This document shows, one piece after another, positions 3,502 through 38,254 of a DNA stretch of 38,811 nucleotides. The notes under the pieces are model-generated. The model was not told the origin of the DNA and made no database searches. It saw only the letters and a program-made list of their open reading frames with translations. Both the position numbers and the translations under genes were made by a program. The number at the start of each line of letters is the position of its first letter. Within the stretch, counting starts at the first letter, position 1. Origin of the DNA: Lenisia limosa (Eukaryota; Protista; Breviatea); contig LPNZ01005727.1 in the NCBI GenBank assembly GCA_001655205.1, positions 1 through 38,811 on the forward strand, in the 5' to 3' direction.

Positions 3502-4120
3502 GATCATGGTCTGACCACTTCCATAAGACACGCAGCCACATGACGGCCCTTGCCACCGCGTACAGTGCGTCAATTCTGCTCCTGACAAGTGGGGTGACGA
3601 GGACATGGGACGAGTCGCAATACCTATGTATATTTTACTCTATAGTGGTGAATAGGGAGTTAAGAGCAAAAATTTGGTTGAATAATATTTTAGATGCTAT
3701 ATTGCATTATATGTGTGTACTATGTACGATATAGTATAATACCCTTTTAAACCCTTAATACACTACATGTCATAGGTGTTCCCTCATGTCATGCATTTAG
3801 CCTCTGCTATCGGGCTTCTCTTTCTCTACCTCAACCCGACTGACAGAGGAAATAGGGTTGTTATTTTGATGGTAAGCATGGAGAAGTAGTTTATAAGTAT
3901 TATTGCTACATAACAAAACGATTTACCACTACTTCAACTGTTGCTACTTGAAATGACTCGCACTCCATATTGACCAAGCCAGACTGCGGCTGTATTTACC
4001 ACATTGTGCTCCCCCATTCTACTCCTCTCTGTGGATGAAGCAAACGAGCCAGCTGATGAAATTTCATGTAAGTAGAAGGGATGTAGTACTTTCCAATACG
4101 TGGTTCAGACCTACAGTCGC
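3502..4120 (+). CDS. Possible exons of a hydrophobic hypothetical protein (perhaps the continuation of the 2713 gene)
   Basis: Splice-bounded open segments: SWSDHF...ILLLTSGVTRTWDESQYL|gt, ag|VFPHVMHLASAIGLLFLYLNPTDRGNRVVILM|gtaagc and ag|TAAVFTTLCSPILLLSVDEANEPADEIS|gtaagt. Phases not fully reconciled. Confidence 0.3.
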
Positions 4121-5239
4121 TTTGAAGAATGAAGTTATAATGGGACTGTTTTGTTTTTTTGTAAAATGACACCCCAACGTACTTCAGAGACTCATGTAAA
4201 GAGAAAAATAATTTGCAAAATTATGAAATGGTGCCCTTGACTTCCAAATTATATTGTTTTCAGCAATTAGTTTTATGACCTATTAGTCAACTTCATCAAG
4301 AAGGACTGTGAAGTCACCCCGGATAATTTGAACTGGGAAAACCCCCTCATGGCGGCCATGATGTGCGACTCCAGAGCATTAGCTTCCAATGGTGTGTTTA
4401 CTGTCGTATCAGGGATGAATAGCTGTGCTGTATAATATGATGCTAATACTTTAAGAATTATCGATATTATTATCATATTGCTGCTCTTATTAAGACTCCT
4501 GAACAACAGCTCTCATTTACTTTGTAGTTGGGATGGGTTTCCATCGATTTTCTTCCTCAGTTTTAATTCCTTACATGTACCTTTGTTGCTTAAGTAAGCC
4601 TGGATACACCTCTTCTGGTTACCTTGTCTAATGGTGGTGAAATGCCATTTTCGGATTTTTTTTGAATTAATATTCAGTGTATTCCTTACATATTCAGGTA
4701 TTGTTTACTTATTTAGTGACATGGGTGAGTGCAATTGTCGGCACTGTTGACCTTATTCTGGTAAGGGCAGGAATAACTCATTAATCCTGATGATATTTAA
4801 CTATTGACCAATGGGGAGTCCATAAACCATATTTATCGTCAAGTTCAAAATATTACGCTTGACATTGTTTTGTTGATGATATGTAATATTCCTGACTTTG
4901 ATAGACGAGACGACGTAACGTCGCTTATTATAACCAGCTTCGCGAAGGCACCCTCTTCGAAGATATTTAAACTTGTTTTGTCTACTTTATCTTTTCTTTT
5001 ATTCTTATGTTGTTTCTCTATTTAATGCACCCTGTTTTCACTTTATGCAAGAGAGCACAAAATCTTTTCATTTAACGTTGTTGGAATTTGACTTAAAGCT
5101 AAATAACACTCACCTTTTACAATATCAAAGATATGAAGCATCTATCTGCACTGTGTCACGTGAAACAACAGTGGAATAAGAAATTACATAAGTGACACAA
5201 ATAAAAAAAGGGAAACAAACAACTCTTCCCCGACTAATT

Positions 5240-6130
5240 CACCCTCGCAAACTAGCTTCCATGTGCTTCCTTGTTTTGTTCATTTCCTGTTCTTCCCTTT
5301 TCTTCTCCTCAATACTCGCCCGTATCTAGTTTGATCAGGAGTTATGCTCTACCTTACATATAATATTACATAAGTTTATTATAATACTAGTAAACGAAAT
5401 AGGCAGTACCTATTCCTACTATTCATTGATATGATATATACTTCGAGCAAAGTCCTTTTTGGATTTCATATCTAGTATTTCTATGAAATAACTAGTGAGT
5501 TACAACAATATGAAAGGAGAAAATAAAGATTCAGTCCAAAATCTTCCATCAAAAATAGCATGGTATTTTTATCATTGTATGAGCATCCTAAACGCGGTTG
5601 TTGACACCACAGACCTTCATTCTTCTGATTCCTCTCGCCACGGTCTTGTTCAAACGATCAGTGTCTCTAAATGATGATTCAAAACAGAAATATTATTGAA
5701 CAATTAAATCTATAATTATATGATATCATATCATTATATTATTCTTCCCCAAAAAAGAAGAAATTTCTCAGGAAAATAGAGCTTTGCGAGGCTTTACCGA
5801 GGTAAACTGTTGAAAACTCTAAGTTGAAGAATATTGTTGATAGGTCAAAAGCCCCTTGATCACCCACACTATGTCCAGCTCTGGTTTTTTCTCTTTAATC
5901 CGTTGTAAGGCGTCTTTAAAGCAAGGACTGTTCTGAAACGATAAGACAGGAACAATCAAAGATGCAACAAACCAGCAGAATTGCAACATCCACGTTGTTT
6001 GGTTTGGTTGTCAGTTTTTTCTGTGGAATCATTAAGTATATGATCAGAAATATGAAACTTAAAACACCCCAACAGTATGTGTGATTTAAGCCTACAATTG
6101 GAGGAGGCACACGGGGCAACGAATCCACCT
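5240..6130 (-). CDS. Fragmentary hypothetical multi-exon gene with ~40-nt introns
   Basis: Removing the 40-nt gtttgt...tttcag intron joins KKLTTKPNNVDVAILL to NSPCFKDALQRIKEKKPELDIVWVIKGLLT. Further exon-like pieces lie at ~5590-5670, ~5450-5495 and ~5240-5330 (IRASIEEKREEQEMNKTRKHMEASLR). Boundaries uncertain. Confidence 0.3.
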
Positions 6131-7036
6131 GTGGGATTCGCGACTATATAATAAGCAGATTTACAAATATGGAACAATTTTTTATATCAGCAAAAAAATA
6201 CAATTACTAAATGATAACAGCTAGATAGGTGAATAATTTTCAATCAAATAGAACTTGAATATCCTTTTGAAGGAACACAAAAACGAACTGCAAGATTTAC
6301 TTCTTCATTATATGCTTAGTTGTGATGGGTAGATCAGAAACTATACTGCCCATTCAGAAAAGAGCATGTAAGCCACAAACCACATTCGTAATGCCAGCCA
6401 CCCATCCCTTATTAAGCTCATAAACCGAAGACGCAGCAATGTTGTGCGACTCTTTCGCAGTTTGGTTCTAAGGGGTCAGATTTAACTGCCGTCACGGCCA
6501 ACCAATGACACAACTGTCTGTGCGAGAGCTTGTTGCGAAGATCCTCCAGTGTCGTCAGTTGAATCCTACACCCATAAGATCATCTTCAAATAAGATGGCC
6601 TCCCAGTCACTTGATCCATTTCCTCACCATCACTGACTCAACGAGTGGAGGAGGTGCAATGTTCAATGTCTGTCAATGTTGTCGCAGCCTGGAAATCCGG
6701 TACAGCGGACGCTGGGCAATCGATGATCGTTAAAGGGTGAAATTGGAATTATTCTTCCTTTTAAACAGTGCCTTGGTGACGACAGTACAATGGGCTTTGA
6801 CAAGGTGAGAGATATCCTGAACCTGAAAACGAAACTATTTCTGACAACTCTATATCTCTGTATTGTTTCACTACTAATTTTTTTTCTGTTACTCACTAGT
6901 TGTCTGTTTCAGTGGTAAAGAGGAAGGGCTGGCGGAAAGAGCGGAACACAAAAAGGATTATTTCCTGGGAGTACAAAGAACCACTTTTTAGCTCTTATTC
7001 CACAGATCGCCGAAGAAGTGGCCTCTCTCAATCACT

Positions 7037-8396
7037 ATGGCAGAAGTAACACCAATTCCTAATGTTCATAACCTTAAGGAAGTCCCTGTGGAAGACAGCA
7101 TCTACTACGAAGATCCCCAGGTGAGCATTCAATGATTTGATGAACGTGGCCTCACGCCTTAGCAAATCTTCTTCTTCAATGCAAAAGATGGTGAATATGA
7201 AGACTTGAAAGAAGCTCTGGAGACTTTTTCTCCGACAGAGAAAGATTTCATGGTTGGTGGGTGATGCAACTGTACGCTTCATTATCGATATATCATTATA
7301 CAGGGACGCACGACGCTTCATTGGGCAGCGGAACGTGGGCATTTGGACTGTGTCAAGCTTCTTCTGGAACACAAAGCGGATATTGAAGCCAAGGATCTCA
7401 TTGTGAGGGGGGAGGGGACAGATAGTGCAATTGTCAGGAGGTCAGCAGTTCCTTCGAGCTTTCATCTCATTATATCATATGATAGATATGCAGAGGATAT
7501 ATTATTTCTGATTGTGATCTTATAACCAACTTACTCATATCATCCATAACGACTGGTGTAACAATCCAGACCCAGACAACTTCTGGATTATCCACTTCTT
7601 CCTACATTATGTTCCATGCTAGTAGCGGGGTCCACTTCTTCCTACATTATGTTGCATGCTAGTAGCGGGGTCCACTACTTCTTACATTATGTTGCATGTT
7701 AGTAGCGGGATTGGGAGAGGGAGATGTTTGGACATTGAAAACCCATTCGTGTTTTAGGTGTGAATTCCAAACTCAATGCTAAAAGAATACTACATCTATT
7801 TGATTGGGCTACATCTTTTCATACACAATGGAGTGTATGATAGGAGTTTTTGAGAATATGAAGCGCACCGTATGGTCAGTTAAAGAAACAGTATCAGTGT
7901 ACATACATAATAGTAACCATACATATGATACAAGTTTTTATTTGTATCAGCAGATGATCCTATTCTGAGTTGATGAAGGCATGCTGAGAAGCTGACGATT
8001 TAGGGTCGCACAGCAGCCTTTTTGGCAGCGCAGGAGGAGCGAAAGGAAGTCCTTCAGTACCTCCTGGAGCAAGGGGCCAAGATAGACTACTTGGACTCAA
8101 CGGTAGGCGGAATCATAATAGGATGTAGACTTGGTAATAGGTATTATTTGGCCGAAGCCATAGTGGGGATTCGGCTTCTGAATTAGTTTATCAAATGGGT
8201 AGATATTGTCATAACATGAGTTAGATGAGAATATCAACATTTGTTGCTTGCCCGTCTTATTTGTTCCGTGAAACTGATTCTTTTTCGGGCTTTATGAAAT
8301 GTAACACTGGTTCAGAAGGACACCGCTTTGATGTGGGTGCAGCGCATGGGTCTGAAGGAAATGGAGGAAGTCATCAAGGCTCATCTCGCGAATTAG
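7037..8396 (+). CDS. Ankyrin-repeat protein, 150 aa, 5 exons
   Basis: Exons 7037-7120, 7163-7252, 7304-7402, 8004-8102 and 8316-8396, all phase-0 GT-AG junctions. Canonical ankyrin motifs GRTTLHWAAERGHLDCVKLLLEHKADIEAKD and GRTAAFLAAQEERKEVLQYLLEQGAKIDYLD, then a KDTALMW... capping repeat ending in TAG. Confidence 0.92.
7591..7710. repeat. 3 x 40-bp tandem minisatellite in ankyrin intron 3
   Basis: tccacttcttcctacattatgtt(c/g)catgctagtagcgggg repeated at 7591, 7631 and 7671 with few mismatches. Confidence 0.95.
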
Positions 8397-8601
8397 TCAT
8401 GTATGTCATGTTGGGTTTTTGATGGAGGTATTTCACTGGAACACCGATGGTGATATGAGTAGGGTTTCAATTAGATCCCAAATAAACTGGGTTTCTGGAT
8501 AAATCACACAAAAAATATTTGGTAATTTGTGAGCCTGGCAGATTTTGGAACTCAACTCGACCATTTTGCATATCTTACATTAAACAAGCTTCACCATCTC
8601 T

Positions 8602-11600
8602 CTATTCGGCCTTTTGATGGTCTCTGAGAATGTACAACATAACAGCGGAAATAGCGAGCAGAAGAACAAAGATGAGCAGCCACCAGAGCCACGATGTGGA
8701 GGAAGACGATGGAGACGTTCCATCAGTAGCGTTGCTGGACCCTCCTTCAGTACCGCCGCCTCCAAGCACGTTTTCTGGCGGTTAGAGGCGTATGCGGAAA
8801 GATCTCTCAATCTGTCAGTCCATCCGCCCACCATTGCAGTTTTTGCCAGGAAGGCATTCCATACAATACACTTCTTCGGTGCATCCTTCAGGAATGCAGC
8901 GACGGTTTGGACACTTCTCAGTGCATGGTTGGACCTAGACAATGTTAGTTCAAGCGGTGCAGGTCAGTCTACAACCTATGCTGGCACCAATTAGATCACC
9001 ATTATATATCCGCAGCCCACCCCCCCTACGGTCGCCTGTCCGCAGCTTAGTGATGCTGCCGCCTCAGCCTGCTGGACCCTTGTCAAGGACTGGCTGAAGG
9101 CGGATATCTTAAGCGTCGCACCTGCAACGGTGAATGTCAAGATGGCAATACGGGATACGTAAGGCGGCAAGAAAGTAGCTAACAACAATACGGTACTCCT
9201 CATAGTCCGTAATAGTTCTATCCATATTGTGTCTAAGAAATTGGGTATTTGCGATATAGTCTCATAAGATTTAAACAAATGTGATCAGATAATGTATGAG
9301 TTGGCCCACGGCCATACCCGCAACTGTCGCCTTGATGCCGAGTTTGAGAGGGAGTGACGACGACCCCGAGGCGCCAAGGCCGGACGTTGATAGGTCCAGA
9401 ACGGATTGCGATGAAGTGCCGGCTGACAGACTATACGGTCATTTTCGCAATGGGACTTGAAAATACTCATTAATAAAATAATTTCACTTGTTTTGAACAA
9501 TCAAGTACATCCGAAGCATTTGTTACCCACATGAAGGAGAAGAAGATGGAGTATCTGCCGTCAGAGAGGCGAGTGCATTGCCACTGGAATCCCATGGCCT
9601 TACCGACTTCGGTCAAAGTGCCCGATTCAACAAACACCTGGGACGTCATATTTAGAAATGAGAAACAGAGAAACGCCAGTCAGAATCAATCATTTTTTAT
9701 CATCAAGATGGGCTCGTCATACCCTGGATGGGATTTCATCAAGAGAGCTGGAAACTAAGTCAACCAGCTGGGGGCACTGGGGATCATTGCTCGCCTTGGC
9801 ATTTTCAGGAATCAGAATGGCGTCCGATCTGAGCGATCCTGGCGGTAATGTGTTGCTGAAGGCTGATGGATCCAGTTGATAGAGGAGCGATGATACGAGA
9901 GACCGTGGCGGATCAGTAGATCTAAATTGATTAGGTAATGTCCGGATAGTTCGGGGGGCAGTTATCTTTATTGGCGAAAGTAATATGCAGAAATGCCTGG
10001 TACAAGTGTAATTATAACACACCTGGTACAATAATAATACAACACACCTGGTGCTGCGGCGAAGTTGGCGGTTTGCCTCGACAATGAAGGAGCCTTGGAA
10101 CCGAGACCCAACAATGACGGGGACTGTGCAGTTAATGGTACATATCAATAGAAGACTATGGGGAGAAAATTCAACAAATTTGAGATGCAAATTGAATATA
10201 ACATTTTGAATACATGCACATCTGTAATAGCGATAATCATAATTGTTTTAAAAACTCGTCCATTTCTGAGGAAGGGAAACATCACAATTTCAGGATAAAC
10301 AAAATTTAGCCTCAGATTCGCTTATGACTTGTCCAGAAACACACTTGGACTAGTATCGGGCTGTGCGGATACCACGGTCAGCCGGGAGGACAGTAGGCTT
10401 TGTGCGGGACAGGCGTCAATGGTCGATACGGATCTGGTTAGGCCCGGCCTGGGGGTTAGAGAGCCTTTGGTCCTGAGTGCATTGCGCATCTCGCGATTGT
10501 CTCAAAGTAAAGGAGTTCCCATTTCATTTCAAATACCGATTTGTCACTTTAAAAAAAGATAAGACGAAAGAATATTTGATACAGTCTCAAGAAAACGAGA
10601 TGCCTCTTCAAAGCCTACGTAAGGACGGAAATGTGGAACATTGCAACCATTCTCATGTCAGACATGGAGCAGACGGACTTCTCACGACAGGTCAGAAGAA
10701 CCGGTACGGCATATCCACCTGTTGGTCAGTTAATATCGTCAAAGATAAGTCTGGGGCATTTCATTTTAACAATTTTAATTTGATATTTTGAATGAACACT
10801 GGTGCTTATGTCCATTCAACAAATAGATGTATACATTGAAGATTCAAACTAAATATCAAACGAGCAGCGCTCACCATCAAGGTCACAGGCGGCAGACTTC
10901 GGCCTCAGCGTCACGGTGACTGTACTGATGCACGCAGCAGTGACGGCCGAGGAACAGTCATTTGGAGATTCATACTCCGTTGTAATATTGGTCACAGTAA
11001 TTTTTTCCGGTACCTAAATATTAGTTTGAACATGATGAAATTGATTTTGAAAATTGCTAATTAATTACGTAGGCTCACAGTTGCTCCGTTTAAATGTTTC
11101 AGGACAGCAGGATGATTAACCCGAAGACTAAACTGTAGTTCGGCCGTCCTTGAGGATGCGTTCCATTGAATGTGGTCCATTCTAATGCTCACCTTCAATG
11201 TGAACTCATGAAATATATCAAGGCTTATTTTAGAACTGCAAAAGAAATGTCATGAAAATGACTGCAAAAGAAATGGCATGAAAATGACGGCAAAAGAGTC
11301 TTCCAACTTACCCCAACATCAGGCATCCTGAGGCCGTTAGAAACAAGGGTAGGTGCAGAAGATGTGACCTGGGGAGTTAACTATTACAAGTGAATTTGTG
11401 CAATATTGAACTTGTGAGTTACACGAGCCAAAGTGAGTAATCACATATCATTTGAAAAGGATGAAATTGGAAGAAAAAGTATGGTAAAGTCGTCATCAGT
11501 AACCTTGAAAGGGGTGTCATTTTTTGGTATGTCTACGTGTAAAGCAGCAGTCACTCCAGTCCATTTGTTGCCTCCAAGGGATTTTTGTGTGGTAACCTAA

Positions 11601-14600
11601 ATGCATGGTGAGGTGTTGGCGGATTATTACAAGAGCAATTGTGACATTTTTGTAAAGGTGAACTTACCTGAACCACAGCAGCCAAAACTGAGTCGCCTTC
11701 CAAGCCACACTCGTTTATCAACGTGTCGATAGTCGTAATCAATGTGGACGTCGTGTAGCATTCCGACGTTGAACCCCGGACAAAGTACTTTGGACCCGAG
11801 CATTGTGTAGGGTTGGACTATGGGTGAGATGCAGGGTGTTACTTTGGTTCGGTAAAACATCGATATTTGAGGAGTTATTGAGAAATTCAGGCATTTTTTG
11901 CACACCACGTGAATTATTAGATACCGAGCTACTTACTTCGGAGCCAATTGAAAACACGGTGTTCAGCACGGTTTCTGCAGTCACCATGAGCTGAACAATA
12001 AGATAAAGTATGTTTTAGACGTTATTGGAGTTGGTAACAATAAAATGAGTCCAATAGAGAAGTTCAATTGTAATTATACATTTACCTGTACAACCCCGTT
12101 GGCCACACGGCTTGATGATAAGAGTGTTAGAGGGTCAAGATTCAGCCTACAGCTTGGTGCTGGAGGCACCTCCAAAATATCATCTGAAAACTGAGTGCTA
12201 ATAATGAATACATAAGTAACCAGCTATCACAAACAACATTCAGCAAAACGGTATGGGTTAGCCCATCTCACAACATCTCCCGTCAATGCAGCCCGAGGTT
12301 GCGGCACATTGCACCCCGCAGGACCCACAGTTGTCAAAGTCTGTTGACAGATTTACACAGGCAGTCCCACACGGAGACTCATTAGAACCGCATTCTGTCT
12401 CTTCAAGGTCTAAATAGTGACCAATGGACAGTGAGGTTATCATCAAATAGCATAAATTACGTCATATTTAAATGGAGTATCAACTATCATCTTGCTCATA
12501 TCATTACCTGAACAGACGCCGTCAACGCATTCAGAAGGGTACTGACAGGAGTTGTGACATTCCCCGCAATGAAGGTTGCTGGAATTGAGCTGGGCCGCCT
12601 CAAGACAGCTATTTGTTCCGCAATCAATCAGCCCAATTGGACAGCCTATTGGATGAAATGGACAGAATCGTATTTGTAATAATTATTCAATTATTTATTT
12701 GTTTATTCTGTTTCATTTGTTACTTACCTCCAGAGCAGAAATCGTTATAATCTAAGCAGCAGTCCTTCATGGACTAAAAAAATGAGTCAGGCGTTGCTAA
12801 GACCTCCCAACCTTGCACTGGTTGTCACAAGAACATGACGTTACATCATTGGAGACAAAATTCCCGCAGTTTCCTTGGCAGCTCGCTATAATGTCATTTC
12901 TCTTTTTCTAGCACGCAAGAGTTTGATTTTATACTTAACACAATCACCTTTACACTCTCCATCAATACATGCAGAAGTTGCAGGGCACTTGTTTCCACAA
13001 GAACCACAGTGATCTCTACTCTCTGAAAAGATTTCGCTTTCGAAACAGGAGTTTTGACATAATGTGATACCTTCATGACATTCTGGACATATCAACTGAT
13101 AAAGTCTCTCGTTTTGTTCACTTTGATCCAAAGAACAAAATGTAGAAAAGAATGGTAATAATGTTGCCATGGCAGAAGTAAGACCAATATAATAGTGAGA
13201 TATAACCTAGGCAATATCAGTCCAAAACCATATCTTACACATTTTGGTCAAAGTGAGTATTAAATGAAGATGCTTACTTGTGCATTTCATCGCTGAATCT
13301 TTGCATTCTTTACAACTGCCATGACATTCTACATTGGTAAATTCAGTCATTTCAAAAAGGGTACTAAAGATCAGGAACCAATTGGCTACCTCTGCATTGC
13401 GAAGGCATAGGGGGGCTGATGTGAAGGAACTCTCCTTCGGGACAGGGAAGATTGTTGGAAATACACTTATCCAGCGAAATGGACAAATGATAGTCTTCAT
13501 GGCACCGAATACAGATGTCACTAGTGCTGCATTTTTCGCAGTTTACAAGACATTCTGAAGATGATAACAATAAAGTATGCAGGCATTACCTTGGCATGAT
13601 CGCTCCACTGTATTCAGCCATTGGCCCGGGGGGCATTCTTCATCATCATGGTGGCATGAAGTGTGGTTCAGATTGAGATGCTCCTCCTGGTGACAGGCCG
13701 TACAGTTTGTGGAAGATGAGCACGAACTGCAAGATGGAGGACATTCTGAATGATTATGTTACAGAGTTTTTCCATACCAAGACAACTAGCAGGACTTTCA
13801 GCATTGAAATATGTGCCCATTGGACATAGAATGTCGTTGGATACGCAGCTGGTAGCCAATACAAGATGATGGTCGTTGTCGCATTCCAAACATGTCATGG
13901 AGTCTAGATGTTAATATAATAATCAGCCCACTTGTGCAGTTGTGACAGTTTGTAAGACATTCCACACATTTTGATGCTGACGAATCTGTAAAGTGACACA
14001 AGCCTTCATTTATACAGACAAAAGACTAATTGTGTTAAAACCTGAGATTTTTAACCCTTTCCATTGTTGATGACCATAATGCAAGACTAGCGTGATTATG
14101 ATCATACCCACACAAATGACAATAAAAATATCAAAACTGCAAAGTGTTGCAAACTATAAAGTGTTGCAACAAACCTATAGCAAGGAAGTAACTTTGTGGG
14201 CATCCTTCGGAGTCACTGACACAGGAAGTGTTGTTAACTGACTGGTGGAAGCCTTTATTGCAAATGCTACAGGTGGTGCTATTGAGGCAGGTTGAGCACT
14301 GATCCAAACATTCTGTATTGTCAGAAACTGATCATATCTTTATCTCTCAGGATTACTAAAAATTCTTCCAAACCTTGGCACTGCATTAATCCATTGTCCA
14401 TGCTCAAAAACTGGCCATCAGGGCAGTCATTCACATTTGACGAGCCTAAGAAGTCATGTGAAACTTGTCTTACAGTTAAGTCCATGAACGTCAAGATGGA
14501 AACCGGGACGGCACTTCTGACACTCATCCACATGGTCGCAGTCAAGGCACATTGATCGGCAGTCTAAGTTGGTATTAGTAATACAAACAATTGCCAACAG

Positions 14601-17600
14601 GGCTTCAGTCCTACTTCTACACATTGGCACTGGGCTTGGGCTCAGGAACTCGCCTTCCTGGCATGATTCCCCGTTGGGTTGACATGTCCTTTGGTCCCTA
14701 AACTGTTTAACAATAGTAATTCACTTCGGTCCAAAAAATCCCAATAAATATCGATGATGTGTGCTATTTAAATGTTGTGCTGCATACTTAGAAAGGAAGA
14801 AGTCCTTGGAGCAGAAATCACATGTTGTCGCCAAGGAACAAGTGTCACAATTGTCAATACATTCTAAAAGTCTTAGAGTTGTTCTTAGTTGTAAAAGATA
14901 AAATATTTAATTCCTTTGTATGGCTTACTGGTGCAGAGGCCTATTTGGTCGAAGAAGCCAGGTTTGCATTGTTCAGTGCAATTGCCATCACTAATAACTT
15001 TGTTCCGGTCATTACATACAAGACAGCCGGATTCCAGACACTGCATACACTCCTTATCTTCACACGCTAATCGAATAAGTTAACAAATTGTAATTACGTA
15101 AACAAGTGCCGTTCTTCTTGAAGGTTGATTCGGGGCAAGTGGAAACACAAGAGGTTCTGTCAACGGACATCACTAGTTCATCAGCACACGTTTCGCACTC
15201 GGTTAAGTTCTTGCATGTCAAGCATGACGTCAGACATTCTAAACTTGTTAGTCAGACTTAATCTCACCTTTACATTGACCATTATCACTAAACATTCCGT
15301 CAGGACATGTCTCAAGACAGGCATCTTGGTCAAGGCTGAGGTGTTTGTCAATTTGACAAGCTTGGCACTTTTGATTGGATTCACATGCTTTACATCCAGG
15401 GAGACATCCTGAATTTGTCAGACGTAGTAAATAATATGTGATATTGTTTACTATAGATTGTTTTATGGAGACTAAAAACCATAATGAACACAAAGTTTAT
15501 TTCAGTCAAAATAGTATTCTCATGTATTTTTACAAAGTCTTGCTGTTTACTCATTATAACCTCAGTATCCCACTTTCACATCTTTCAGTGCTCTCAAACT
15601 GTCCATCTGGGCATTTAACAACGCACATTGTGCTGTTCAACGAGAGGACTAAGTCTATGGTGTCAGCTTCTCACAGGACATACCACTCTTGCAGACACTG
15701 CATTGCGTCTCATCACATAGTAAACAGCTTGAGGTACATGCTTAAATGTAAAAACAATATGTCAACTCACCTTGGCAATTATCTCCTGTAGGGTAGAATC
15801 CTGCTGAACATCCTTCATTACAGGATGATTTGTCTTGAGAAAGAAAGCGCCCTACAACGCATTTCTCACAAACGGCCGCATCGATGCACGTTTCGCAGAA
15901 TGCCGGACAGTCTAGATGGTAATACTAACATTGCGTGGTTACTTTGACAGCTGGTACCATTAGAGAACTGACCACTAGGACATTCAGTAAGACATTCCGT
16001 CCCGCTATAATAGTGACACTGTCAATGCTATAACCAACGTGATAGACAAAACAGTATTGCTGCTGCACTTCAGACAAGTCGAACTTGAAACACATGTGTC
16101 ACATGATGGTACACAAGCTGTGGGTTAATGGTGAACTTGTTCAAGGAAAAATAATCAATTTGTCCTTGATTATTACACTTACCTTTACATGATTTCATTT
16201 CTTCGAAAAACCCAGAAGGGCATTGTGTGACACAAGTCAGGTTGCTTTGAAGCAAGAAGCCTTCCTGGCAAAAAATGCACTGAAAAGGGTTTTCACAATC
16301 TTCACACCCATTGATGCAGCCTGTTTGTCAAACGGCAAAAGTGCATACCTGAGCAAGTGCCATTGTTGTTAAACTCTCCTTTGGGACAGTTTGCCACACA
16401 CATAGAGACATCAGAGGACAACAGAAGGCCAGAGCGACACACAGTGCATTTGTCCTCAAAGTTGCATTCACGACATCCGATTGGACAGGCTATATCATGA
16501 CTTATGCTTACAATGGGTCGAAAAGACAGGTGGAACATTGTTATTTGATTCTTGAGATTATTAAGAAGTTGTTCTCTGATGGACCTTTAGGGTCCAGCAC
16601 TATCCCAAACAGACCTGCACAAGCACCTCTACTTTCAAAGAAACCATTTGGGCAGTCAGAGTGGCATTGTTTTGTTGTTGGGTTAAGAACGGACCCTGGG
16701 GTACACCCCAGGCATAAATCCGAGGAAGCGCAAGTGGCACAGTTCTGGGGGCAGTCTAAACGTGTTATAAGGCCAACACGTGCTTCACCTTGGCATATTA
16801 GTCCGTCAGAGAAGGTTGACGCCGGACAATTGTCAACACATTGGAAATCGCCTGTCAGTACATTGGGGAAACGACAGGACTGGCATTTCTTGGCAGTTTC
16901 ACATGATGAGCATCTGGAAGGGCATTCTAAAGCAAAATAAAAAGTCGAATCGTTGCCATACGTTTGCATTCAGAATTGTCGACATAGAACTCATCAGGAC
17001 ACTGGGTGATGCACTTCAAGGTTGTTGATAGGAAGAGTCCAGGGTTACAAACGTCACAGATGTTCAGGTTACTACATTTAGCACACCCAGAAACACAGCC
17101 TGAAAGTAAGGGCAACGGCAGTGAATCCAACTTCGACATTGGCCTGGGTTTGCGGGGTTGACCATTGAGCCCAAAGGACAGCTATCAACACACTGATTGA
17201 GAGTATCTGTGAGAAGAAGGCCGTCTGCACATTCATGACAAGTTGTCCCATCATCACATTTTGTACACCCGTCTAAACACTCTACAATGTTACTCTTTAT
17301 GAATTCCACATTGCTCATAACCTTCTCAAGCATACCTTTACATTTGCCAATATCTGGGTACGACCCAGTAGGGCAGGATTTCACACAATTTCCATTGCTT
17401 AACAATAATCCTTCTTGACATTTCTGACAAGATGTTGCATCTTCACATTTTTCACAACCTTCCATGCATACTAGAGGTAAAAATAACGTTTAAGCCTACA
17501 TTTACACTTCAAGATGCCCTTGAACTGTCTAATTGGGCACGATTCGAGACACTCCGTCTGGTCAATCGAAAGGATGAAATCGTCTCGACATACAGTACAC

Positions 17601-19557
17601 AGCTTCTCATCGGTGCACTTTTTACAGTTCTCCAAACAGTCTACAAATCAGGCAACACTTAGGCTTACCTTTACATATCCCATTCTCATTAAAAAACCTA
17701 TTTCCACAAGATGTTTCGCATTTACCCTCATTGGTAAGGACTTTGTTTTCGTTACATACGAGGCACTTGTCGATAGTGCAACTGGAGCAGCCAGTTGGGC
17801 ATTCTTGATCTGTGAGAAAGAGAAAACGTCTTACCAATGCACTGCCCTTCAATTGCTGACTGTCCTTCAGAGCACTTCCCAACGCATTCTGTCTTGGAAA
17901 CAGAGAGGTGTAGTGTATCATCACATTCAATGCATGTATTGGCATTATCACATTTAACACAGCCGTCCAAGCAGTCTACATGGTCATAGTTGCACAACCT
18001 ACCTTGACAGTTAATGGTGCCAATGCGGAATGCACCAGATCCGCAATTTATGATGCAGCTGAAGTCGTCATCTAGCAGAAAGCCATCCTGGCATTTAATG
18101 CATGTTGACTGCTCAGTGCACTGCTCACAGCGATCAATACAATCTAGAAGTTATTGGGAGTAGGATACAAACTAATGCATCTGGTTGGGTTTTCAGGGTC
18201 AAGCATTTGGCCAGCTGGGCAGCTATCAACGCATTTGGACCCATCAGAAGTCATAACCTTGCCAACTTTGCAATTCAAACAGGAACTTCCTGATGAACAT
18301 TCGGTACAACCGTCAGTACAAGCTACAAGATTACAGGATAGCCGTTTTACTCACTCTGACATTTGGAGGTTGTTTTTTCACCATAAGAACCAGTTGGACA
18401 ACTTCGTTTACACTGGCCATCGAATTGGATGAAGTAGCCACTGTCACAACGTGTACAGCTGCTTTCAGAACATGTAATACAGCTGCTCATACATTCTGTG
18501 TGTTAATATCTGCCAATGCTCCCTGGGTTAACCTACCCTCACAAGTTGTCTCCGCCTTCCTGTATCTTAAAGGGCAATTTACCACACATGATCTATAACC
18601 AATTGCCGTTTTGCGATGAAGGTAACTTCCTAGGAATGTAATTGGAGTTGTAAAGCTCACCATCTTGACAGACATCGCACCTCGATCCAAACCTGCACAC
18701 TTTGCATCTACTGAAGCACTCTGAACGTTGTTAATTCGACACTATCACTAACTTAAGCATGTCTGCTTTTTACTGAACTGGAAAGCAGGGCATTGTTCCT
18801 CACACTGTTTTTCAGTAGATAAGAAGAGAGGGGTTGCGCACTCGTTGCACTTTGTCCCCCGGCAACTTGCGCAACGGGCAGTTGGGCAATCTGAAAAGTG
18901 AATAGTATTTGATATTGTCCTACTGGGATTTTCTTGTTTTCCTCCTTCAAGACCAAGTTCTAATAAGTCAGCAAACAATGAGTAACAATTCATCATTACC
19001 CAGCTTACTTGAACACCGTTCGTTGACTATTTCATACCCTTCTGGGCATTCAGCAAGACATTGATCTGCGTGTTCGGAAAGAAAAAAGGTGGAATTACAT
19101 GTTACACACAGAGATTCATCTTGACAATCCAAGCAGTTCAAAGGACATGCTTAAAGAAATTATAGACAGCAGTTTTCTTACCAGTGCAATTTCCGTCTTG
19201 TGCCAGGATGAATCCTTCTTTACATTCAGCACATCCAAATATTTCGGGCAACTCATCGTTCAAAACATGGCAAATCTCACACCCGTCAATAGCTGGGTCA
19301 CATGGGGTTGTCCACTCGTCCAGTTGCCCCAAAGAAGAAGCTTAACCATGAGTATTATAAATATTGACAATGAAAGGTCTATCTAATTAAGATCTCGTTG
19401 AAGTTTCAATTGCTGAACATTCAATTTCACAATAATATTCATGAAATAACGCAATTATTATCAATTTCAATGGTTGATTTACCAGGTCAATATAAATGGC
19501 CAACATACCTGCAAGAAACCAGCAGATTCCAATGAGGACAAAGGCAAAATACTTCAT
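8602..19557 (-). CDS. Giant cysteine-rich type I membrane/surface protein: signal peptide, ~30 furin-like repeats, STIG1-like/SMB region, unknown domain, TM
   Basis: ATG at 19557, exon 1 MKYFAFVLIGICWFLA G|gtatgt. It is followed by a long series of GT-AG exons whose translations are continuous Cys-repeat units. Last exon 8602-8774 is ENVLGGGGTEGGSSNATDGTSPSSSTSWLWWLLIFVLLLAISAVMLYILRDHQKAE*. Most junctions reconcile in phase; a few (~11340-11470, ~13090-13270, ~13960-14180) are unresolved. Estimated 55-60 exons. Confidence 0.85.
12272..13082 (-). other. Three STIG1-like Cys repeats flanking the SMB domain
   Basis: Exons 12948-13082 (...SRDHCGSCGNKCPATSACIDGECK), 12508-12645 (...SNLHCGECHNSCQYPSECVDGVCS) and 12272-12409 (CVNLSTDFDNCGSCGVQCAATSGCIDGRC) match the 'D/N-x2-N/H-CG-x-CG-x2-C-x5-C-x2-G-x-C' pattern I associate with STIG1-type repeats. 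The family name is from pattern recall, not a search. Confidence 0.6.
12728..12885 (-). other. Somatomedin-B-like domain within the giant gene (two exons)
   Basis: Exons 12812-12885 and 12728-12773 splice to ASCQGNCGNFVSNDVTSCSCDNQCK|SMKDCCLDYNDFCSG, the 8-Cys SMB pattern (C-x3-C...CxC-x3-C-x5-CC-x-DY-x3-C). Confidence 0.8.
13278..19340 (-). other. Array of ~29-30 furin-like (FU / growth-factor-receptor Cys-rich) CxxC repeats within the giant gene
   Basis: Units such as ACPLNCLDCQDESLCVTCNSTFFLSEHADQCLAECPEGYEIVNERCS, ECPSRCSSCETAKKCQSCRFPNVLTGDFQCVDNCPASTFSDGLICQ and ECLVNCEKCSTSDICIRCHEDYHLSISLDKCISNNLPCPEGEFL show the C-x2/3-C-x2-C...C-x2-C...C-x3-C-P spacing typical of FU repeats. Confidence 0.9.
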
Positions 19558-20079
19558 TGCTTTCTTGTCATAAAGTTGTCTGTTTACACAAGGACACACG
19601 TTGAATTTTGAGAAGAGAAACCCTTGTTTATCAAAGGAAATTGACTACCTGGTCAATTTTGTTCAGATAGCAAACTGTTGTGTCGTTGATTTGTAGGGAA
19701 AGAAGATTGTATTTGAGAGCTGAAAGAGATAACTAAAAGAATGCTATATATAGAAGGTTAGAAAAGTCATCAATGGAATCGGCTAGAAAAGTAAAACTTA
19801 TTTCAAATAGTGTAAAAACTTACATAAGCTTCAAATTCGCTGTTGTTATAAAGAGAAAACGCATTAGCAGTCATAACATTTAACCTTTGCGCGAGGCGTT
19901 ATGCGTGTATTTTTGGGAAGTTGTCGAATAATTGAGACCTCTTATGCAACCTCATACCTGATAATCATACTTGGGACATTATTTAGAGCCTAAATTATTA
20001 TAAATCCTAATGGTTTTCATTGGAAGTTACTGTTGAAGAGACTTCTCAGTCCATTCTAGAGCTTGGTAAGAAGTTTAAT

Positions 20080-20950
20080 CAATATGGCCCCTTCTCCGGG
20101 AGATTTAGAGCCAGATAATTGTCTCAATGTTGCTTCAACCGACAGTGGACTTGATCTAGAGTCCTGTAAATTAGTCTGCAGAAAGTCAAGAACACATGGA
20201 GATCTATTTGTTTCTGTTGTCATTGCTGGAAGCGCGGTTTACATCATTGAAGGGATGGCAGTCTTGTCAAAGTTCATCTGTCCGAAAGCTCCAAGAGATG
20301 CCTTTTTTGCCCTCTTTCCTGAGTATCCTTCCCTGTCTTCAATGACCACATCCACATCGTGTACAACTACACCGTTTCTTGAGCACCTCGTTATTGTCAA
20401 CGATGATACGTTCATTGTCATGGGCCCTGACAAGAAGGTCGAAGTAACTGTAAGCTCCCTTGGATTTTATTGTTTTTGGTATTATTATTCTAAGCATTAT
20501 TGTTAATGATTTCTGTAATTAACGAGATAGGTGTCTTTGTTTTGTTTATACTTTCAGATTATTTGATTCCACGAGAGAAGAGGCATTGTTGATCTTTACA
20601 AGTTCCGAGTTTTACACCTCCAGGTGAACAGTCCCCACGGCCGACATATCACCAGTTATGCCCCTTGCTCAACCGGGTTTGTCTTCTCCACCGTCTTCCC
20701 TGAAATCAGCCCGCTCTCTGCCGTACCAGATCACATAACCGCCGGTTTGGGGGTAAACACTCGGATTTTTTGAACATGCAAAAGCGATCTCTGAAATCTT
20801 TCTTGAAATAACGGGCAAGGCATGTACCTGCTGAGCCATCCGTTGGACGTACCGGTTAACCTCAAAATAACCGTTCCTCTTTCGCCGTCATCTTCTGGAC
20901 CGTCTAGATCGTTGAACTTCGCAAAATCAAGTGGGTTTGGATTTTAATTG
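20080..20950 (-). pseudogene. Degraded or unresolved hypothetical gene
   Basis: Protein-like stretches (GELTVTSTFLSGPMTMNVSSLTITRCSRNGVVVHDVDVVIEDREGYSGK...; NPNPLDFAKFNDLDGPEDDGERGTVILRLTG...) are interrupted by in-frame stops. No family recognised. Confidence 0.3.
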
Positions 20951-21446
20951 ACAATTATCTTGAACTGCCATACATATGAGTATGGTATTAGCCTCATTAT
21001 ATGTACAGATATGGAATCATTTACTGTTTTCTTTTTTTGTATAAATTTTGACACTGATAATGAAGAATATACAGCTTAACACCTATCTCGTTAATTACCT
21101 TGCAGCTTTCCAGGTTGTGTCGTCTTACGCTCCCTTGCCCATAATTGCGGTGGAGGGAAGATGGCCGGTTGTGAACAAGCTTCCTGCTAATTCCAAATTC
21201 GTGGCAGGTTTGAGGCTACTCAATTAACTCTCACTTGAGAATTGGGGGATTTTAAAAAAATGTTTATTCTTGTTTTGTCTTAATGGAGAGTGAACAGAAT
21301 TCATGTGTAAAATATGTCCTCAATGATAGCTGTCGGCGGCTTCTGCGATATTCACCTTCTCTATATTGACTCATGCTGTGTGTGTTCATAGACAAGGAAT
21401 TTTATTGTAAAAACATGTTTTGATTTCCTTTAGACTTCGTTGAGAT

Positions 21447-22520
21447 ATGGCACCTGTCATCACCCCTGACCCCAAACGTTCGACCGGTTATGTCGGAAGC
21501 GGTGCCGTTTGTGACGGGCACAATGGCTTCTGGTATGTACACTAAATGACTTTTTATTTGGAAATAGCACTCTTAGTTGACTTTTTCTCAATCACTGAAA
21601 GAATATGGTCCTATTTTTTACCGAAGTGCAGTCGTTATGATTATATTGGGAGCGATTTTGTTCCTAATCTGCTAATCTTACTATTCAGGTGCGGTGTTTC
21701 TCCCCCTCCAAACTCCGACTAAAAATCAAGGGTAAGATGGCGAGTTCTATTCTGTCCCAAAAAGAAGGATTTTTTTTAAACTCTCGCTAAAGATGATATT
21801 TCCATTTTAAACCTTCCTGACATGACCAGTCCGGCCGCGCTGGCCAGTTCGGCGTTCCAGTTTGTAACTGCCCGGCGACTGTGGTCTTCCCGGCTTGGTT
21901 CGAGGTCCCTCGCTATCCCCGCCGCCGTTAAGCTCACTCCAAGCCAAAAGTACGGCGCTGTGCGTCACTGGCAGTTACTAATATATCATGCGATAAGTCC
22001 TGAGACGATTGACTAAAGATAAAGCTCACTATCCGTGTCAGGAGTTATTACAGTCACAGTAGTGAGATAACATTATTTGACCATAAAAAGTCCAAACAGT
22101 ATCTATCACTTGTTTACATAATTCTTGTTCCGATATACAGTCACATTTTTCATCTGCAGCCCCTCGGAAACGCCTCATTTCGGCAAGCCACTGGAACTGT
22201 CTTCTTTGGTGTTTATCAACACTAAGGTTGTTGGACCCTTACGGTAGGCAAATGGAGTGAAAAAAGACTACTATTTTGAATTAGACCTCTGTCCTATTTA
22301 TCAAACCTGTTCAGAAACCTATTTTAATTCCCCCTGATCATTTTAGCTCAACATCATGCAACGAATCAGCAGTTATTGGGCTGTTTCTGCCTTCCTCACG
22401 CCTTCTTCTGCGGTTCTCTGTTCAGCCACTCGGACTCTATCCTGTTGCCTCATTTTTGGCTATTGGAAAGCTGAAGTACTCTTTGAAAGAGAACTTTAAA
22501 GCGCTTCCTCCCCTGAAGTA
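21447..22520 (+). CDS. Spliced hypothetical gene (reading frame ambiguous)
   Basis: Clear intron 21533-21688 (gtatgt...gctaatc...ttcag), plus further donor/acceptor pairs at ~21732/21828, ~22160/22245 and ~22350/22520. It reads either as a 39-aa ORF (21447-21722) or as an internal part of a longer frame. Confidence 0.3.
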
Positions 22521-22559
22521 AGCCTTTAACTTGTCTCATATCGCAAATGAACCAGGAGA

Positions 22560-22673
22560 GTTTTTTTTGTTTCATACAGTTCCTTTCCCTTTGTCATATG
22601 TGTTGTCAGCCAACAGGGTATTTGGGTTGTTTTTTTTTTGTTTCATCAATTTTCCACACACCCCCCCCCCCCC
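22560..22673 (+). repeat. Intron-like dispersed repeat, copy 1 (3' end in gap)
   Basis: Core gtgttgtcagccaacagggtatttgggttgttttttttttgtttcatcaatttt...poly-C. Confidence 0.75.
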
Positions 22674-23740
22674 NNNNNNNNNNNNNNNNNNNNNNNNNNN
22701 NNNNNNNNNNNNNNNNNNNNNNNNNNNNNNNNNNNNNNNNNNNNNNNNNNNNNNNNNNNNNNNNNNNNNNNNNNNNNCTAGCGGTAGTAACTCCCGGGGA
22801 CAAGACAGCCATTCTGTCGCTTACTGCGGACAATATGCCACTGGCCACTGTTCCGACTCCGGAGGGCCTTCTCCCGAACTTGGTCTGAGGGTCTTTACAA
22901 ATGACAGCGTGATTGGCCCTTTTGTACATACAGCATTATTTGAACAACATCACCACGTCTATAATCCAGCAATTTTCAGGTTTCCTGACTTTTTAGACGC
23001 TCCTACCACCGCCGTCACCCCAACTCCCGCCTGCCTTCAACCCACCCAGTGTCCCAATGTCTCCTCCAAACAGGCTCCTAAAGCCCTACTCCCCAGGCCC
23101 CCTGAAACACCCTGTTCACGCCAACCTTCCAAAAGCGGCAATCAAGGCCCCGGCCCGCCCTCCTCGGATGCTTTTCCAGGCAAGTGGTGCAGCGCCGGAT
23201 CCGAAAAATCTTGCCGACTCTCACCCCGCATTGCCAAAGCCTTTGTTCCCCTCCGCCACTGCACCGCCTATTATTCCGCCTTTCTCCCCGGGTTCCGACA
23301 ACAGCAATAATGTCCGCTTCGAAAGGGGTAAATTGGCCGCCAGCCCTCCGAGCCTTATGCAAGACATTTCTCTCGGTTTGCTCTTTTGCGGATCTTATTC
23401 TAACTTCAAAGTCGGCCCCATGATATAATTGTTGTTGTTTTTTTATCTTGTGTTGTATGCGTATCTATGATCACACCTCCCCTTGTTGAAGCCCACTAAC
23501 ATTTAAGAATCACCAACTGAGTCTTCGAGACGGCGGCGCACCGAGGCAGCTAATGGACCCGGCCTAGACTCGTGCCCCTTATCCCCTCGGGTGCCCAGGC
23601 CAACGTACCCGGATATCCACATTTCTGCTATTGGGCATAGAACCGTCTTCATCTCTCCCTTGGTGGGTGAACAGTTTGATAGTGTGTGATATGGGCGTTG
23701 GTGTTTCTTCATTTTGTCTGCCTCTTCCAGATTCTCATTT

Positions 23741-23865
23741 GTGTTCTTTTTCTTTCAAATAACCTTCACTTCCCTCCCACAGTTGTTGTCAGCCATCAAA
23801 GTTGATTTTGATGTTTTTTGTTTCATACATTTTCTAATCCCCCCCCCCCCTATCTTTTTCCCAAG
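23741..23865 (+). repeat. Intron-like dispersed repeat, copy 2 (GT...AG, 125 nt)
   Basis: attt|gtgttc...gttgtcagccatcaaagttgattttgatgttttttgtttcatacattttctaatcccccc...cccaag|. Confidence 0.75.
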
Positions 23866-24043
23866 TTGTCTTACACGACCATGTTGTCATTCTTCAGGAT
23901 TCTAAGGAGAGCCTGCACGGTGTGGCTGTACCGTTGCCNNNNNNNNNNNNNNNNNNNNNNNNNNNNNNNNNNNNNNNNNNNNNNNNNNNNNNNNNNNNNN
24001 NNNNNNNNNNNNNNNNNNNNNNNNNNNNNNNNNNNNNNNNNNN

Positions 24044-38236: not shown

Positions 38237-38254
38237 TACATCGTGCATTAACTA

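What the first reader, a model, noticed from the sequence alone, without database searches (positions are those of the whole stretch)
8602..19557. An 11-kb gene hidden from the ORF track: giant surface protein with an unusual FU + STIG1-like + SMB + unknown-domain + TM architecture
Seen: dozens of short minus-strand ORFs join through GT-AG junctions into one frame, from a signal-peptide exon (19557) to a TM exon with a 7-aa tail (RDHQKAE*). Known: long CxxC/FU arrays anchored by a C-terminal TM characterise protist surface antigens and adhesins such as Giardia VSP/HCMP and Entamoeba Igl. SMB domains are best known from animal vitronectin and ENPP proteins. Inference: this is a rod-like adhesin, receptor or coat protein. 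I do not recognise this domain combination from any characterised protein.
Basis: partly seen in the sequence, partly recalled or inferred. Interest (0 to 1): 0.8.

Follow-up and report, generated by a model that had tools for sequence, protein, structure and literature searches.

The report
Giant furin-repeat surface protein gene
A protist gene split into 58 small pieces encodes a 2,236-residue membrane-anchored surface protein built mostly of 28 cysteine-rich "furin-like" repeats; the gene is real and its domain mix is unusual, but this kind of protein is well known in protists.

Summary
On the minus strand, 19557-8602, I could join 58 exons through 57 GT-AG introns into one 6,711-nt frame (2,236 aa). 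It has only two hydrophobic segments: an N-terminal signal peptide and a C-terminal TM followed by RDHQKAE*.

The order of parts is:
- 28 full furin-like (FU) repeats, with a partial FU-like unit before them and a half repeat after them
- one STIG1-like module, one true somatomedin-B (SMB) domain, then two more STIG1-like modules
- a 514-aa cysteine-poor region that matched nothing
- a 7-Cys module, a Ser/Gly-rich stalk, the TM and a 7-aa tail

The FU repeats match R-spondin FU domains in sequence and in predicted fold. The SMB domain passes Pfam's threshold once its two exons are spliced.

PolyA RNA contigs confirm only the last five introns and the TM exon. Nothing covers 9.9-19.6 kb, so a single transcript is inferred from chained reading phases, not shown.

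The best reading is a type I rod-like surface coat or adhesion protein without a signalling tail. In build it resembles the Giardia CRMP/HCMP class, but it is not a VSP.

It is a new domain combination of a known kind. Scan notes report other FU-plus-TM genes in this genome. Interest is modest.

The parts
8602..19557 (-). Whole gene: 58 exons, 57 GT-AG introns, 6,711-nt CDS, 2,236 aa
   Evidence: Splice-aware DP plus manual curation. One open frame from ATG 19557 to TAG 8604-8602.
19509..19557 (-). Exon 1: start codon and signal-peptide core (MKYFAFVLIGICWFLA, continued by ASS in exon 2)
   Evidence: It is the first ATG of its ORF. It is one of only two segments with a 19-aa Kyte-Doolittle mean above 1.6.
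13278..19340 (-). FU array, exons 2-38: an N-terminal FU-like unit, 28 full FU repeats (aa 71-1436) and a terminal half repeat. Most repeats are a single 135-165-nt exon bounded by phase-1 introns of 25-35 nt.
   Evidence: Alignment A1 gives the consensus CxxxCxxCx5CxxCx12Cx3CPxGxFx5C. The profile finds 28 full hits at i-E 3e-8 to 1e-17. PDB profile search: R-spondin FU, E 3.5e-9. AF2 pLDDT 93, TM 0.85 to RSPO2 Fu1-Fu2.
12948..13082 (-). STIG1-like module 1 (exon 39)
   Evidence: Pfam Stig1 19.9 bits, below the 24.1 cut-off. It is 43-48% identical to the other two modules.
12728..12885 (-). Somatomedin-B domain, split over exons 40 (12885-12812) and 41 (12773-12728) by a 38-nt intron
   Evidence: The spliced 39 aa score Pfam Somatomedin_B 37.1 bits, E 4e-9, cut-off 23.1, covering model positions 2-38 of 40. 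The best PDB match is the SMB domain of snake venom phosphodiesterase, followed by ENPP2/3.
12508..12645 (-). STIG1-like module 2 (exon 42)
   Evidence: Pfam Stig1 20.2 bits; alignment A2.
12272..12409 (-). STIG1-like module 3 (exon 43)
   Evidence: Pfam Stig1 27.1-28.2 bits, above the 24.1 cut-off, matching model positions 42-82 of 85.
9030..12183 (-). Unassigned region, exons 44-56, aa 1632-2145 (514 aa). It is Ser/Thr/Leu/Val-rich with 13 Cys. Introns are 65-221 nt with mixed phases.
   Evidence: Exons 53-56 lie on a spliced RNA contig. Exons 44-52 are predicted only. The chosen frame has the best codon score in 9 of 9 exons, and exon GC is 51% against 38% for introns. No match in Pfam, PDB, 1.84 billion representative proteins, the Atlas or metagenome contigs.
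8832..8934 (-). Membrane-proximal 7-Cys module (exon 57), unclassified
   Evidence: No Pfam family. RNA contigs cover 8832-8915, and the junction 9030|8934 is seen.
8602..8774 (-). Last exon: Gly/Ser/Thr-rich stalk, TM (WLWWLLIFVLLLAISAVMLYIL), tail RDHQKAE and stop
   Evidence: One RNA contig runs unbroken over 8581-8774 and is spliced to 8832. Translation; hydrophobicity.
8775..9722 (-). Five RNA-confirmed GT-AG introns: 9722-9638, 9530-9431, 9317-9122, 9029-8935, 8831-8775
   Evidence: Joints in Logan contigs of polyA RNA run X1. GT and AG ends checked. The 9029-8935 joint rests on a 9-nt loose end that matches the start of exon 57.

Best explanation
This is one protein-coding gene of a tiny-intron protist. 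Earlier scan notes name the breviate Lenisia limosa; I did not test that.

The product is a type I single-pass membrane glycoprotein of about 2,236 aa. A cleavable signal peptide sends it into the secretory pathway. About 1,400 residues then form a disulfide-stapled rod of 28 FU repeats, each with the R-spondin/EGFR-type beta-hairpin ladder. If extended, the rod would hold the N-terminus tens of nanometres from the membrane.

Below the rod come four small disulfide knots (STIG1-like, SMB, STIG1-like, STIG1-like). After them come a 514-aa cysteine-poor region of unknown fold, one more Cys module, a Ser/Gly/Thr-rich stalk that is probably O-glycosylated, and the TM helix. Only seven residues lie in the cytoplasm, so the protein cannot signal by itself.

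Its most likely role is a structural surface coat or adhesion molecule that binds bacteria, prey, epibionts or the substratum through its ectodomain.

Shown: the exon chain, the domain identities, the 3' splicing, and the TM with its tail. Inferred: a single transcript across 9.9-19.6 kb, surface location, glycosylation, rod length, and any binding function.

The array probably grew by old tandem duplication of an "exon plus tiny phase-1 intron" unit.
For: - One open frame across 58 exons with canonical GT-AG ends. G stands at donor position +5 in 48 of 57 introns, and a pyrimidine at acceptor position -3 in 54 of 57.
- 28 full FU profile hits, confined to this strand and locus.
- Six repeats that are split by internal introns score as full or nearly full FU units once spliced: model positions 1-39 to 1-46 of 46.
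- The FU profile matches R-spondin FU domains at E 3.5e-9. The AF2 model has pLDDT 93 and superposes on RSPO2 Fu1-Fu2 at TM 0.85 and 1.4 A.
- The SMB domain exists only after the 38-nt intron is removed. It then scores 37.1 bits against a cut-off of 23.1, which independently validates that splice.
- RNA contigs confirm the last five introns, the TM exon and the stop codon.
- Hydrophobic segments occur only at aa 1-19 and about 2206-2230.
- Continuity across the gap without RNA: exon 44 has no Met and strong splice sites, and the phases of exons 43 to 53 chain without a break.
- The downstream part has no signal-peptide candidate of its own, yet it carries extracellular-type features: a Cys module, N-glycosylation sequons and a Ser-rich stalk.
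- Cys content is 12.8%, with 91 CXXC motifs.
- FU repeats are only 32% identical to one another at the median, with no DNA-level repeats, so the duplications are old.
Against: - No RNA covers 9.9-19.6 kb. Run X1 holds 0.00 of the sampled words there. One transcript, and exons 2-52, are therefore model-based.
- Some exons are uncertain: 18959-18924; a possible extra exon at 16550-16512, which I left out; the pair 11596-11445 and 11235-11079 against the alternative 11368-11312; and 10718-10619.
- Phase 1-1 exons keep the frame whether they are included or skipped. The frame is therefore a weak test inside the FU array.
- The splice-site consensus is partly circular, because the model was trained on its own introns.
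- Function is inferred from architecture alone.
- The organism's identity comes from earlier AI notes.
Confidence: 0.68

Rival explanations
1. Two adjacent genes on the same strand. The first would encode a secreted FU/STIG1-like/SMB protein that ends at the read-through stop just after exon 43 (…CIDGRCCEMG*, about 12261). The second would encode a separate membrane protein from about 12.2-8.6 kb.
For: RNA contigs cover only 8581-9867, and none covers the FU array. Reading past the donor at 12272 reaches a stop after five codons. Intron size and phase change sharply at this point: median 34 nt with 40 of 43 in phase 1, against 109.5 nt with mixed phases.
Against: Exon 44 has strong acceptor and donor sites, contains no Met, and is phase-compatible with exon 43. 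No segment between 12.2 and 8.8 kb is hydrophobic enough to be a signal peptide. Yet the C-terminal part has extracellular-type Cys modules and a glyco-stalk. The missing upstream RNA is expected from 3' bias in a 47-Mb polyA data set.
Confidence: 0.15
2. One gene, but the product is a ligand-binding receptor or cargo or endocytic receptor that works with a partner protein. The FU and SMB modules would bind a specific ligand, and lateral association in the membrane would pass on the signal.
For: FU domains bind receptors in R-spondins, and SMB domains mediate protein binding in vitronectin and ENPPs (names of the PDB matches). Scan note s1-190280 reports an FU-containing mosaic receptor with a signalling tail in the same genome.
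Against: The cytoplasmic tail is 7 aa (RDHQKAE), with no tyrosine-based or dileucine sorting motif and no domain. Twenty-eight diverged repeats suit a spacer or coat better than a single binding site. No partner is known.
Confidence: 0.12
3. A decaying or untranslated repeat array. The FU exons would be relics, and only the 3' end would be expressed.
For: No RNA words from the array appear in the only RNA run. One repeat (exon 33) lacks its last Cys.
Against: A 6.7-kb frame stays open across 58 exons. The first seven Cys positions are invariant and the eighth is present in at least 90% of the 22 aligned repeats, although the repeats have diverged to 32% identity. That pattern indicates purifying selection.
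Confidence: 0.05

Closest known systems
Giardia Cys-rich membrane proteins (CRMP, formerly HCMP) and VSPs
   Same: Type I build: a signal peptide, a Cys-rich ectodomain dominated by CXXC motifs with FU or EGF-type repeats, a single C-terminal TM and a very short cytoplasmic tail. These definitions are from bioRxiv 10.1101/2022.03.07.483299. Here there are 12.8% Cys, 91 CXXC motifs and a 7-aa tail.
   Different: There is no CRGKA tail, which defines VSPs. The Pfam VSP score of 21.3 bits is below the 31.4 cut-off. This protein is much longer. It has SMB and STIG1-like modules and a 514-aa Cys-poor region. It is encoded by 58 exons in an unrelated lineage. Common descent was not tested.
R-spondin FU1-FU2 domains, and the Cys-rich regions of ErbB and insulin receptors
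   Same: The repeat unit has the same Cys spacing and the same predicted fold: profile E 3.5e-9, TM 0.85, rmsd 1.4 A.
   Different: R-spondins are small secreted proteins with two FU units followed by a TSR domain (from memory). Here 28 units form a membrane-anchored array.
Animal membrane proteins with long FU arrays (PCSK5/PC5B Cys-rich region, FRAS1, ELAPOR1). These are recalled from memory and were not fetched here.
   Same: Tandem FU-type repeats followed by a TM. Two repeats weakly hit Pfam TNFR_ELAPOR1_6th.
   Different: There is no protease, CSPG or Calx-beta domain. The membership features of those families were not tested.
SMB domains of vitronectin and ENPP1-3
   Same: All eight Cys are in the canonical spacing. 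Pfam scores 37.1 bits; the best PDB matches are the SMB domains of snake venom PDE and ENPP2/3.
   Different: This is a single SMB embedded between STIG1-like knots. No hemopexin or phosphodiesterase domain is present.
Other FU-plus-TM genes of the same genome (scan notes s1-192379 and s1-190280)
   Same: They are reported to place FU-type repeats next to a membrane anchor.
   Different: Those carry a polysaccharide-lyase head, or Sushi and Ig domains with a signalling tail. I did not examine their sequences.

Membership tests
Furin-like (FU) repeat | Conserved eight-Cys spacing of the repeat | tested here: met
   Seven Cys are invariant and the eighth is present in at least 90% of 22 repeats. 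Consensus CxxxCxxCx5CxxCx12Cx3CPxGxFx5C.
Furin-like (FU) repeat | Sequence-profile match to solved FU domains | tested here: met
   R-spondin-1/2 FU domains, E 3.5e-9 to 6e-7.
Furin-like (FU) repeat | FU fold (beta-hairpin ladder) | tested here: met
   AF2 pLDDT 93.3. Foldseek gives TM 0.85 and rmsd 1.4 A to RSPO2 Fu1-Fu2, followed by ErbB and insulin-receptor Cys-rich regions.
Furin-like (FU) repeat | Pfam Furin-like_2 gathering score (28 bits) | tested here: not met
   The best single repeat or repeat pair scores about 20-21 bits, and 12 of 22 repeats hit below the cut-off. Only single repeats or a pair could be submitted. The model has 102 positions.
Somatomedin B domain (PF01033) | Pfam gathering score and eight conserved Cys | tested here: met
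   37.1 bits against 23.1, E 4e-9, model positions 2-38 of 40, for the spliced exons 40 and 41.
STIG1-like (PF04885) | Pfam gathering score (24.1 bits) over the domain | tested here: inconclusive
   Module 3 scores 27.1-28.2 bits; modules 1 and 2 score 19.9 and 20.2. Only model positions 42-82 of 85 are matched. There is no solved relative. The AF2 model has pLDDT 58.7 and is unusable.
Giardia VSP | Conserved CRGKA cytoplasmic tail (the defining feature per 10.1101/2022.03.07.483299) | tested here: not met
   The tail is RDHQKAE.
Giardia VSP | Pfam VSP gathering score (31.4 bits) | tested here: not met
   21.3 bits for a two-repeat ORF; 3 of 22 repeats hit weakly.
CRMP/HCMP-type build (a descriptive class) | Signal peptide, Cys-rich CXXC ectodomain, single C-terminal TM, and a tail other than CRGKA | tested here: met
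   This shows a shared build, not shared ancestry.
SEA domain (considered for the membrane-proximal region because of a GSFIV motif) | Profile match to SEA | tested here: inconclusive
   The 176-aa ORF that contains the motif has no Pfam hit at E up to 1. The domain would span several exons, and I could not submit them joined.

The most novel reading that the evidence does not exclude
The 514-aa cysteine-poor membrane-proximal region, which has no detectable relative, could be a new fold that carries the protein's real activity. One possibility is a ligand-binding head. Another is a SEA-like self-cleaving module, hinted at by a GSFIV motif. The whole molecule could then be the docking site through which this breviate holds its bacterial epibionts or prey. 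Its phase-1, one-repeat-per-exon design would show animal-style exon shuffling of extracellular modules in the deepest branch of Obazoa.
Probability: 0.12. Interest if true: 0.6.

Novelty: new variant of a known kind. Interest (0 to 1): 0.3.

Why it matters
If the gene model holds, it adds a very large, well-defined surface molecule to an organism whose biology turns on cell-surface contact with bacteria. It also places FU, SMB and STIG1-like modules together in a deep-branching relative of animals and fungi.

It is a clean example of how tiny-intron, one-module-per-exon genes escape ORF-based annotation.

The practical value is a curated exon map and a 514-aa orphan region worth folding. The protein class itself, a Cys-rich FU-repeat type I surface protein, is already familiar from several protists and from animals.

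Tried and rejected
- Non-AG acceptors. Earlier scan notes report TG-ending introns, so I allowed TG and GG ends for introns up to 40 nt. None was chosen at either penalty. All 57 introns end in AG.
- Automatic model versus hand curation. The DP mis-set or missed several boundaries (the split of exons 6 and 7, the starts of exons 15 and 26, and exons 47, 48 and 50). I reset them by eye so that they restore FU repeats or long open frames.
- Homologues of the unassigned region, all blank or spurious:
  - phmmer of the 176-aa ORF against 1.84 billion representatives gave two low-complexity hits.
  - The Atlas gave a best score of 0.66.
  - Two metagenome scans found nothing.
  - Exon-wise Pfam found nothing.
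  - Exon-wise PDB searches found nothing.
- A conserved C-terminal exon shared by a multigene family, as in VSPs: no candidates.
- Near relatives of a two-repeat ORF: none.
- Fold of the STIG1-like module: pLDDT 58.7, unusable.
- Flanking ORFs: no Pfam family. I could not confirm the organism from this window.
- DNA-level repeats within the gene or the window: none.
- Steps not done. The spliced protein has no reference, and long sequences may not be typed. The whole protein and the 514-aa region therefore never went through Pfam, HHpred-type searches or structure prediction. Only the 39-aa SMB domain was typed.
Full report
**What is in the sequence**

The six-frame view of 8.4-19.8 kb shows dozens of short, stop-free, cysteine-rich segments on the minus strand only. 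I built a splice-aware dynamic-programming model with codon log-odds, learned donor and acceptor matrices, and RNA-confirmed introns held fixed. I then corrected it by eye wherever a furin-like repeat was visibly cut.

The curated model has 58 exons and 57 introns, all GT-AG. It gives a 6,711-nt frame from ATG 19557 to TAG 8604-8602, or 2,236 aa. Beyond the imposed GT and AG, G stands at donor position +5 in 48 of 57 introns and a pyrimidine at acceptor position -3 in 54 of 57. This is partly circular, because the matrices were trained on the model's own introns. Allowing TG or GG acceptors, which earlier scan notes report for this genome, changed nothing.

**RNA evidence**

Only one RNA run holds this locus: a small (47 Mb) polyA metatranscriptome, available as Logan contigs. 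Laid on 8500-14499, it gave two spliced contigs.

- The first covers 8581-8774 joined to 8832-8915. This shows that the stalk, TM, tail and stop lie in one exon.
- The second covers 9867-9723, 9637-9531, 9430-9318 and 9121-9030. A 9-nt overhang on it matches the start of the exon at 8934.

All junctions are GT-AG on the minus strand, and the joined contigs read as one open frame. No RNA contig covers 9.9-14.5 kb, and the run holds 0.00 of the sampled words of 9900-19600. Transcription and splicing are therefore shown for exons 53-58 only.

**Domains**

*FU repeats.* Twenty-two repeats that each occupy one exon align with seven invariant Cys and an eighth that is nearly invariant. The consensus is CxxxCxxCx5CxxCx12Cx3CPxGxFx5C. 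A profile of them finds 28 full repeats in the spliced protein (aa 71-1436), with i-E values from 3e-8 to 1e-17. Six of these repeats are split by an internal intron and score as full or nearly full units (model positions 1-39 to 1-46 of 46) only after splicing. In the six-frame translation of the whole window the profile gives 30 hits, all on this strand and in this locus.

The profile matches R-spondin FU domains in the PDB at E 3.5e-9. An AlphaFold model of one repeat has pLDDT 93.3. It superposes on Xenopus RSPO2 Fu1-Fu2 at TM 0.85 and rmsd 1.4 A, with ErbB and insulin-receptor Cys-rich regions ranking next. Pfam's Furin-like_2 and VSP models hit only below their cut-offs.

*Small Cys modules.* After a half repeat come three mutually homologous STIG1-like modules, 43-48% identical. 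One exceeds the Pfam Stig1 cut-off and two do not.

Between the first and second STIG1-like modules lies a somatomedin-B domain. It is split by a 38-nt intron. Alone, the first exon scores 19.2 bits. Spliced, the domain scores 37.1 bits (E 4e-9, cut-off 23.1) over almost the whole model. Its best solved relatives are the SMB domains of snake venom phosphodiesterase and ENPP2/3. That gain in score is independent support for the splice.

*The unassigned region.* Exons 44-56 encode 514 aa with 13 Cys, rich in Ser, Thr, Leu and Val, with no internal repeat. Nothing matched it, and I could test it only exon by exon or as stop-free ORFs:

- no Pfam family
- no PDB chain
- only two spurious low-complexity hits for the 176-aa ORF among 1.84 billion representative proteins
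- an Atlas score of 0.66
- no related metagenome loci

In all nine exons that lack RNA support, the chosen frame has the best codon score of the three. Exons of this part have 51% GC against 38% for their introns. These support coding status but are not independent of how the model was built.

*The C-terminal end.* The region is followed by a 7-Cys module with no family, a Gly/Ser/Thr-rich stalk, a 22-residue TM and the tail RDHQKAE. The only two strongly hydrophobic stretches in the protein are aa 1-19 and the TM. The protein is 12.8% Cys, with 91 CXXC motifs and 23 N-glycosylation sequons.

**Gene anatomy**

In the part that encodes Cys modules, 40 of 43 introns are in phase 1 and the median intron is 34 nt (range 25-195). 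In the 3' part, phases are mixed and the median is 109.5 nt (range 57-221). FU repeats are 32% identical at the median, or 17% without the Cys columns. BLASTN finds no DNA-level repeat in the gene or the window. The array therefore looks like an old tandem multiplication of an "exon plus tiny phase-1 intron" unit. It is not a recent or cassette-like expansion.

**One gene or two?**

Reading through the donor at 12272 gives a stop after five codons. A secreted FU/STIG1/SMB protein followed by a second gene is therefore conceivable, and the change in intron style falls at the same place. Three points speak against it:

- Exon 44 has good splice sites, contains no Met, and fits the phase of exon 43.
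- The phases of exons 43 to 53 chain without a break.
- The downstream part has no signal-peptide candidate, although its Cys module, sequons and stalk are extracellular in character.

I put one gene at roughly 0.8 and two genes at 0.15.

Uncertain exons, which would change the length by tens of residues, are:

- 18959-18924
- an omitted candidate at 16550-16512
- the pair 11596-11445 and 11235-11079, against the alternative 11368-11312
- 10718-10619

**How it most likely works**

The anatomy is that of a type I surface glycoprotein. A long disulfide-stiffened FU rod stands on a globular, membrane-proximal region and a glyco-stalk. A 7-residue tail cannot signal. I therefore read it as a surface coat or adhesion molecule.

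Surface location, glycosylation, rod length and any ligand are inferences. The idea that it binds the organism's bacterial partners is speculation. It is prompted only by the lifestyle reported for Lenisia limosa (abstract of PMC12453579).

**Comparison with known proteins**

In build it matches what the Giardia literature calls CRMPs (formerly HCMPs): a signal peptide, a CXXC-rich ectodomain with FU or EGF repeats, one C-terminal TM, and a tail of variable length that is not CRGKA (10.1101/2022.03.07.483299). It is not a VSP, because the defining CRGKA tail and the Pfam VSP threshold are both missed.

The repeat unit itself is a bona fide FU domain of the R-spondin, ErbB and insulin-receptor type.

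SMB is not confined to animals. An SMB domain-containing protein is annotated in Ostreococcus tauri (PMC5082852). I found no paper describing FU plus SMB plus STIG1-like modules together, or such proteins in breviates. The open library is incomplete, however.

Scan notes report two other FU-plus-TM genes in this genome, s1-192379 and s1-190280. An FU stalk thus seems to be a recurring building block there. I did not check those notes.

**Limits**

- The spliced protein has no reference and long sequences may not be typed. Whole-protein Pfam, HHpred-type searches, SignalP and structure prediction of the orphan region could not be run.
- The organism name rests on earlier AI notes. The 25-35-nt introns agree with those notes, but flanking ORFs gave no family to test it.

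**Verdict**

It is a new domain combination of a familiar kind of protist surface protein. Interest is modest and centres on the orphan region and on the exon design.

Noticed in passing
window 12272-19508 versus 8775-12271: Two intron regimes occur within one gene. The Cys-module part has 43 introns with a median of 34 nt, and 40 of them are in phase 1. The 3' part has 14 introns with a median of 109.5 nt and mixed phases. Almost every FU repeat is one symmetric 1-1 exon, the layout known from exon shuffling of animal extracellular modules.
   Followed up: partly
window 16756-16788 and 17282-17335: Some tiny introns have lengths that are multiples of three and contain no stop codon in frame. 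They read through as 11-18-aa linkers, which is why ORFs of 141-142 aa holding two FU repeats appear in the ORF list. Retaining these introns would not break the frame.
   Followed up: no
window 10048-10123 (exon 52): The motif FQGSFIVE resembles the G/SVVV self-cleavage motif of SEA domains, which sit near the membrane in mucin-like proteins. No Pfam SEA hit was found for the ORF that contains it. This is an untested lead and could be chance.
   Followed up: partly
window about 11240-11300, 10010-10055 and 14150-14190: Short local duplications lie at or next to splice sites. They are 'cattttcatg.catttcttttgcag' (twice), 'ACCAGGTGTGTT' (twice) and 'ttgcaacacttt' (twice). They offer alternative acceptor or donor sites.
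   Followed up: no
window 14175-14312 (exon 33): One FU repeat lacks the eighth Cys (…CPQSYFLAI followed by a donor site). No phase-compatible alternative that restores it was found.
   Followed up: partly
window about 22.7, 24.0, 30.2 and 36.5 kb: Runs of masked bases (N, seen as X in the ORF translations) interrupt the rest of the window. Another scan note (s1-211578) proposes introner-like elements in 22560-38700.
   Followed up: no
window 1-8600 and 19600-38811: No FU or STIG1-like module occurs elsewhere in the window. Seven flanking ORFs have no Pfam family.
   Followed up: partly
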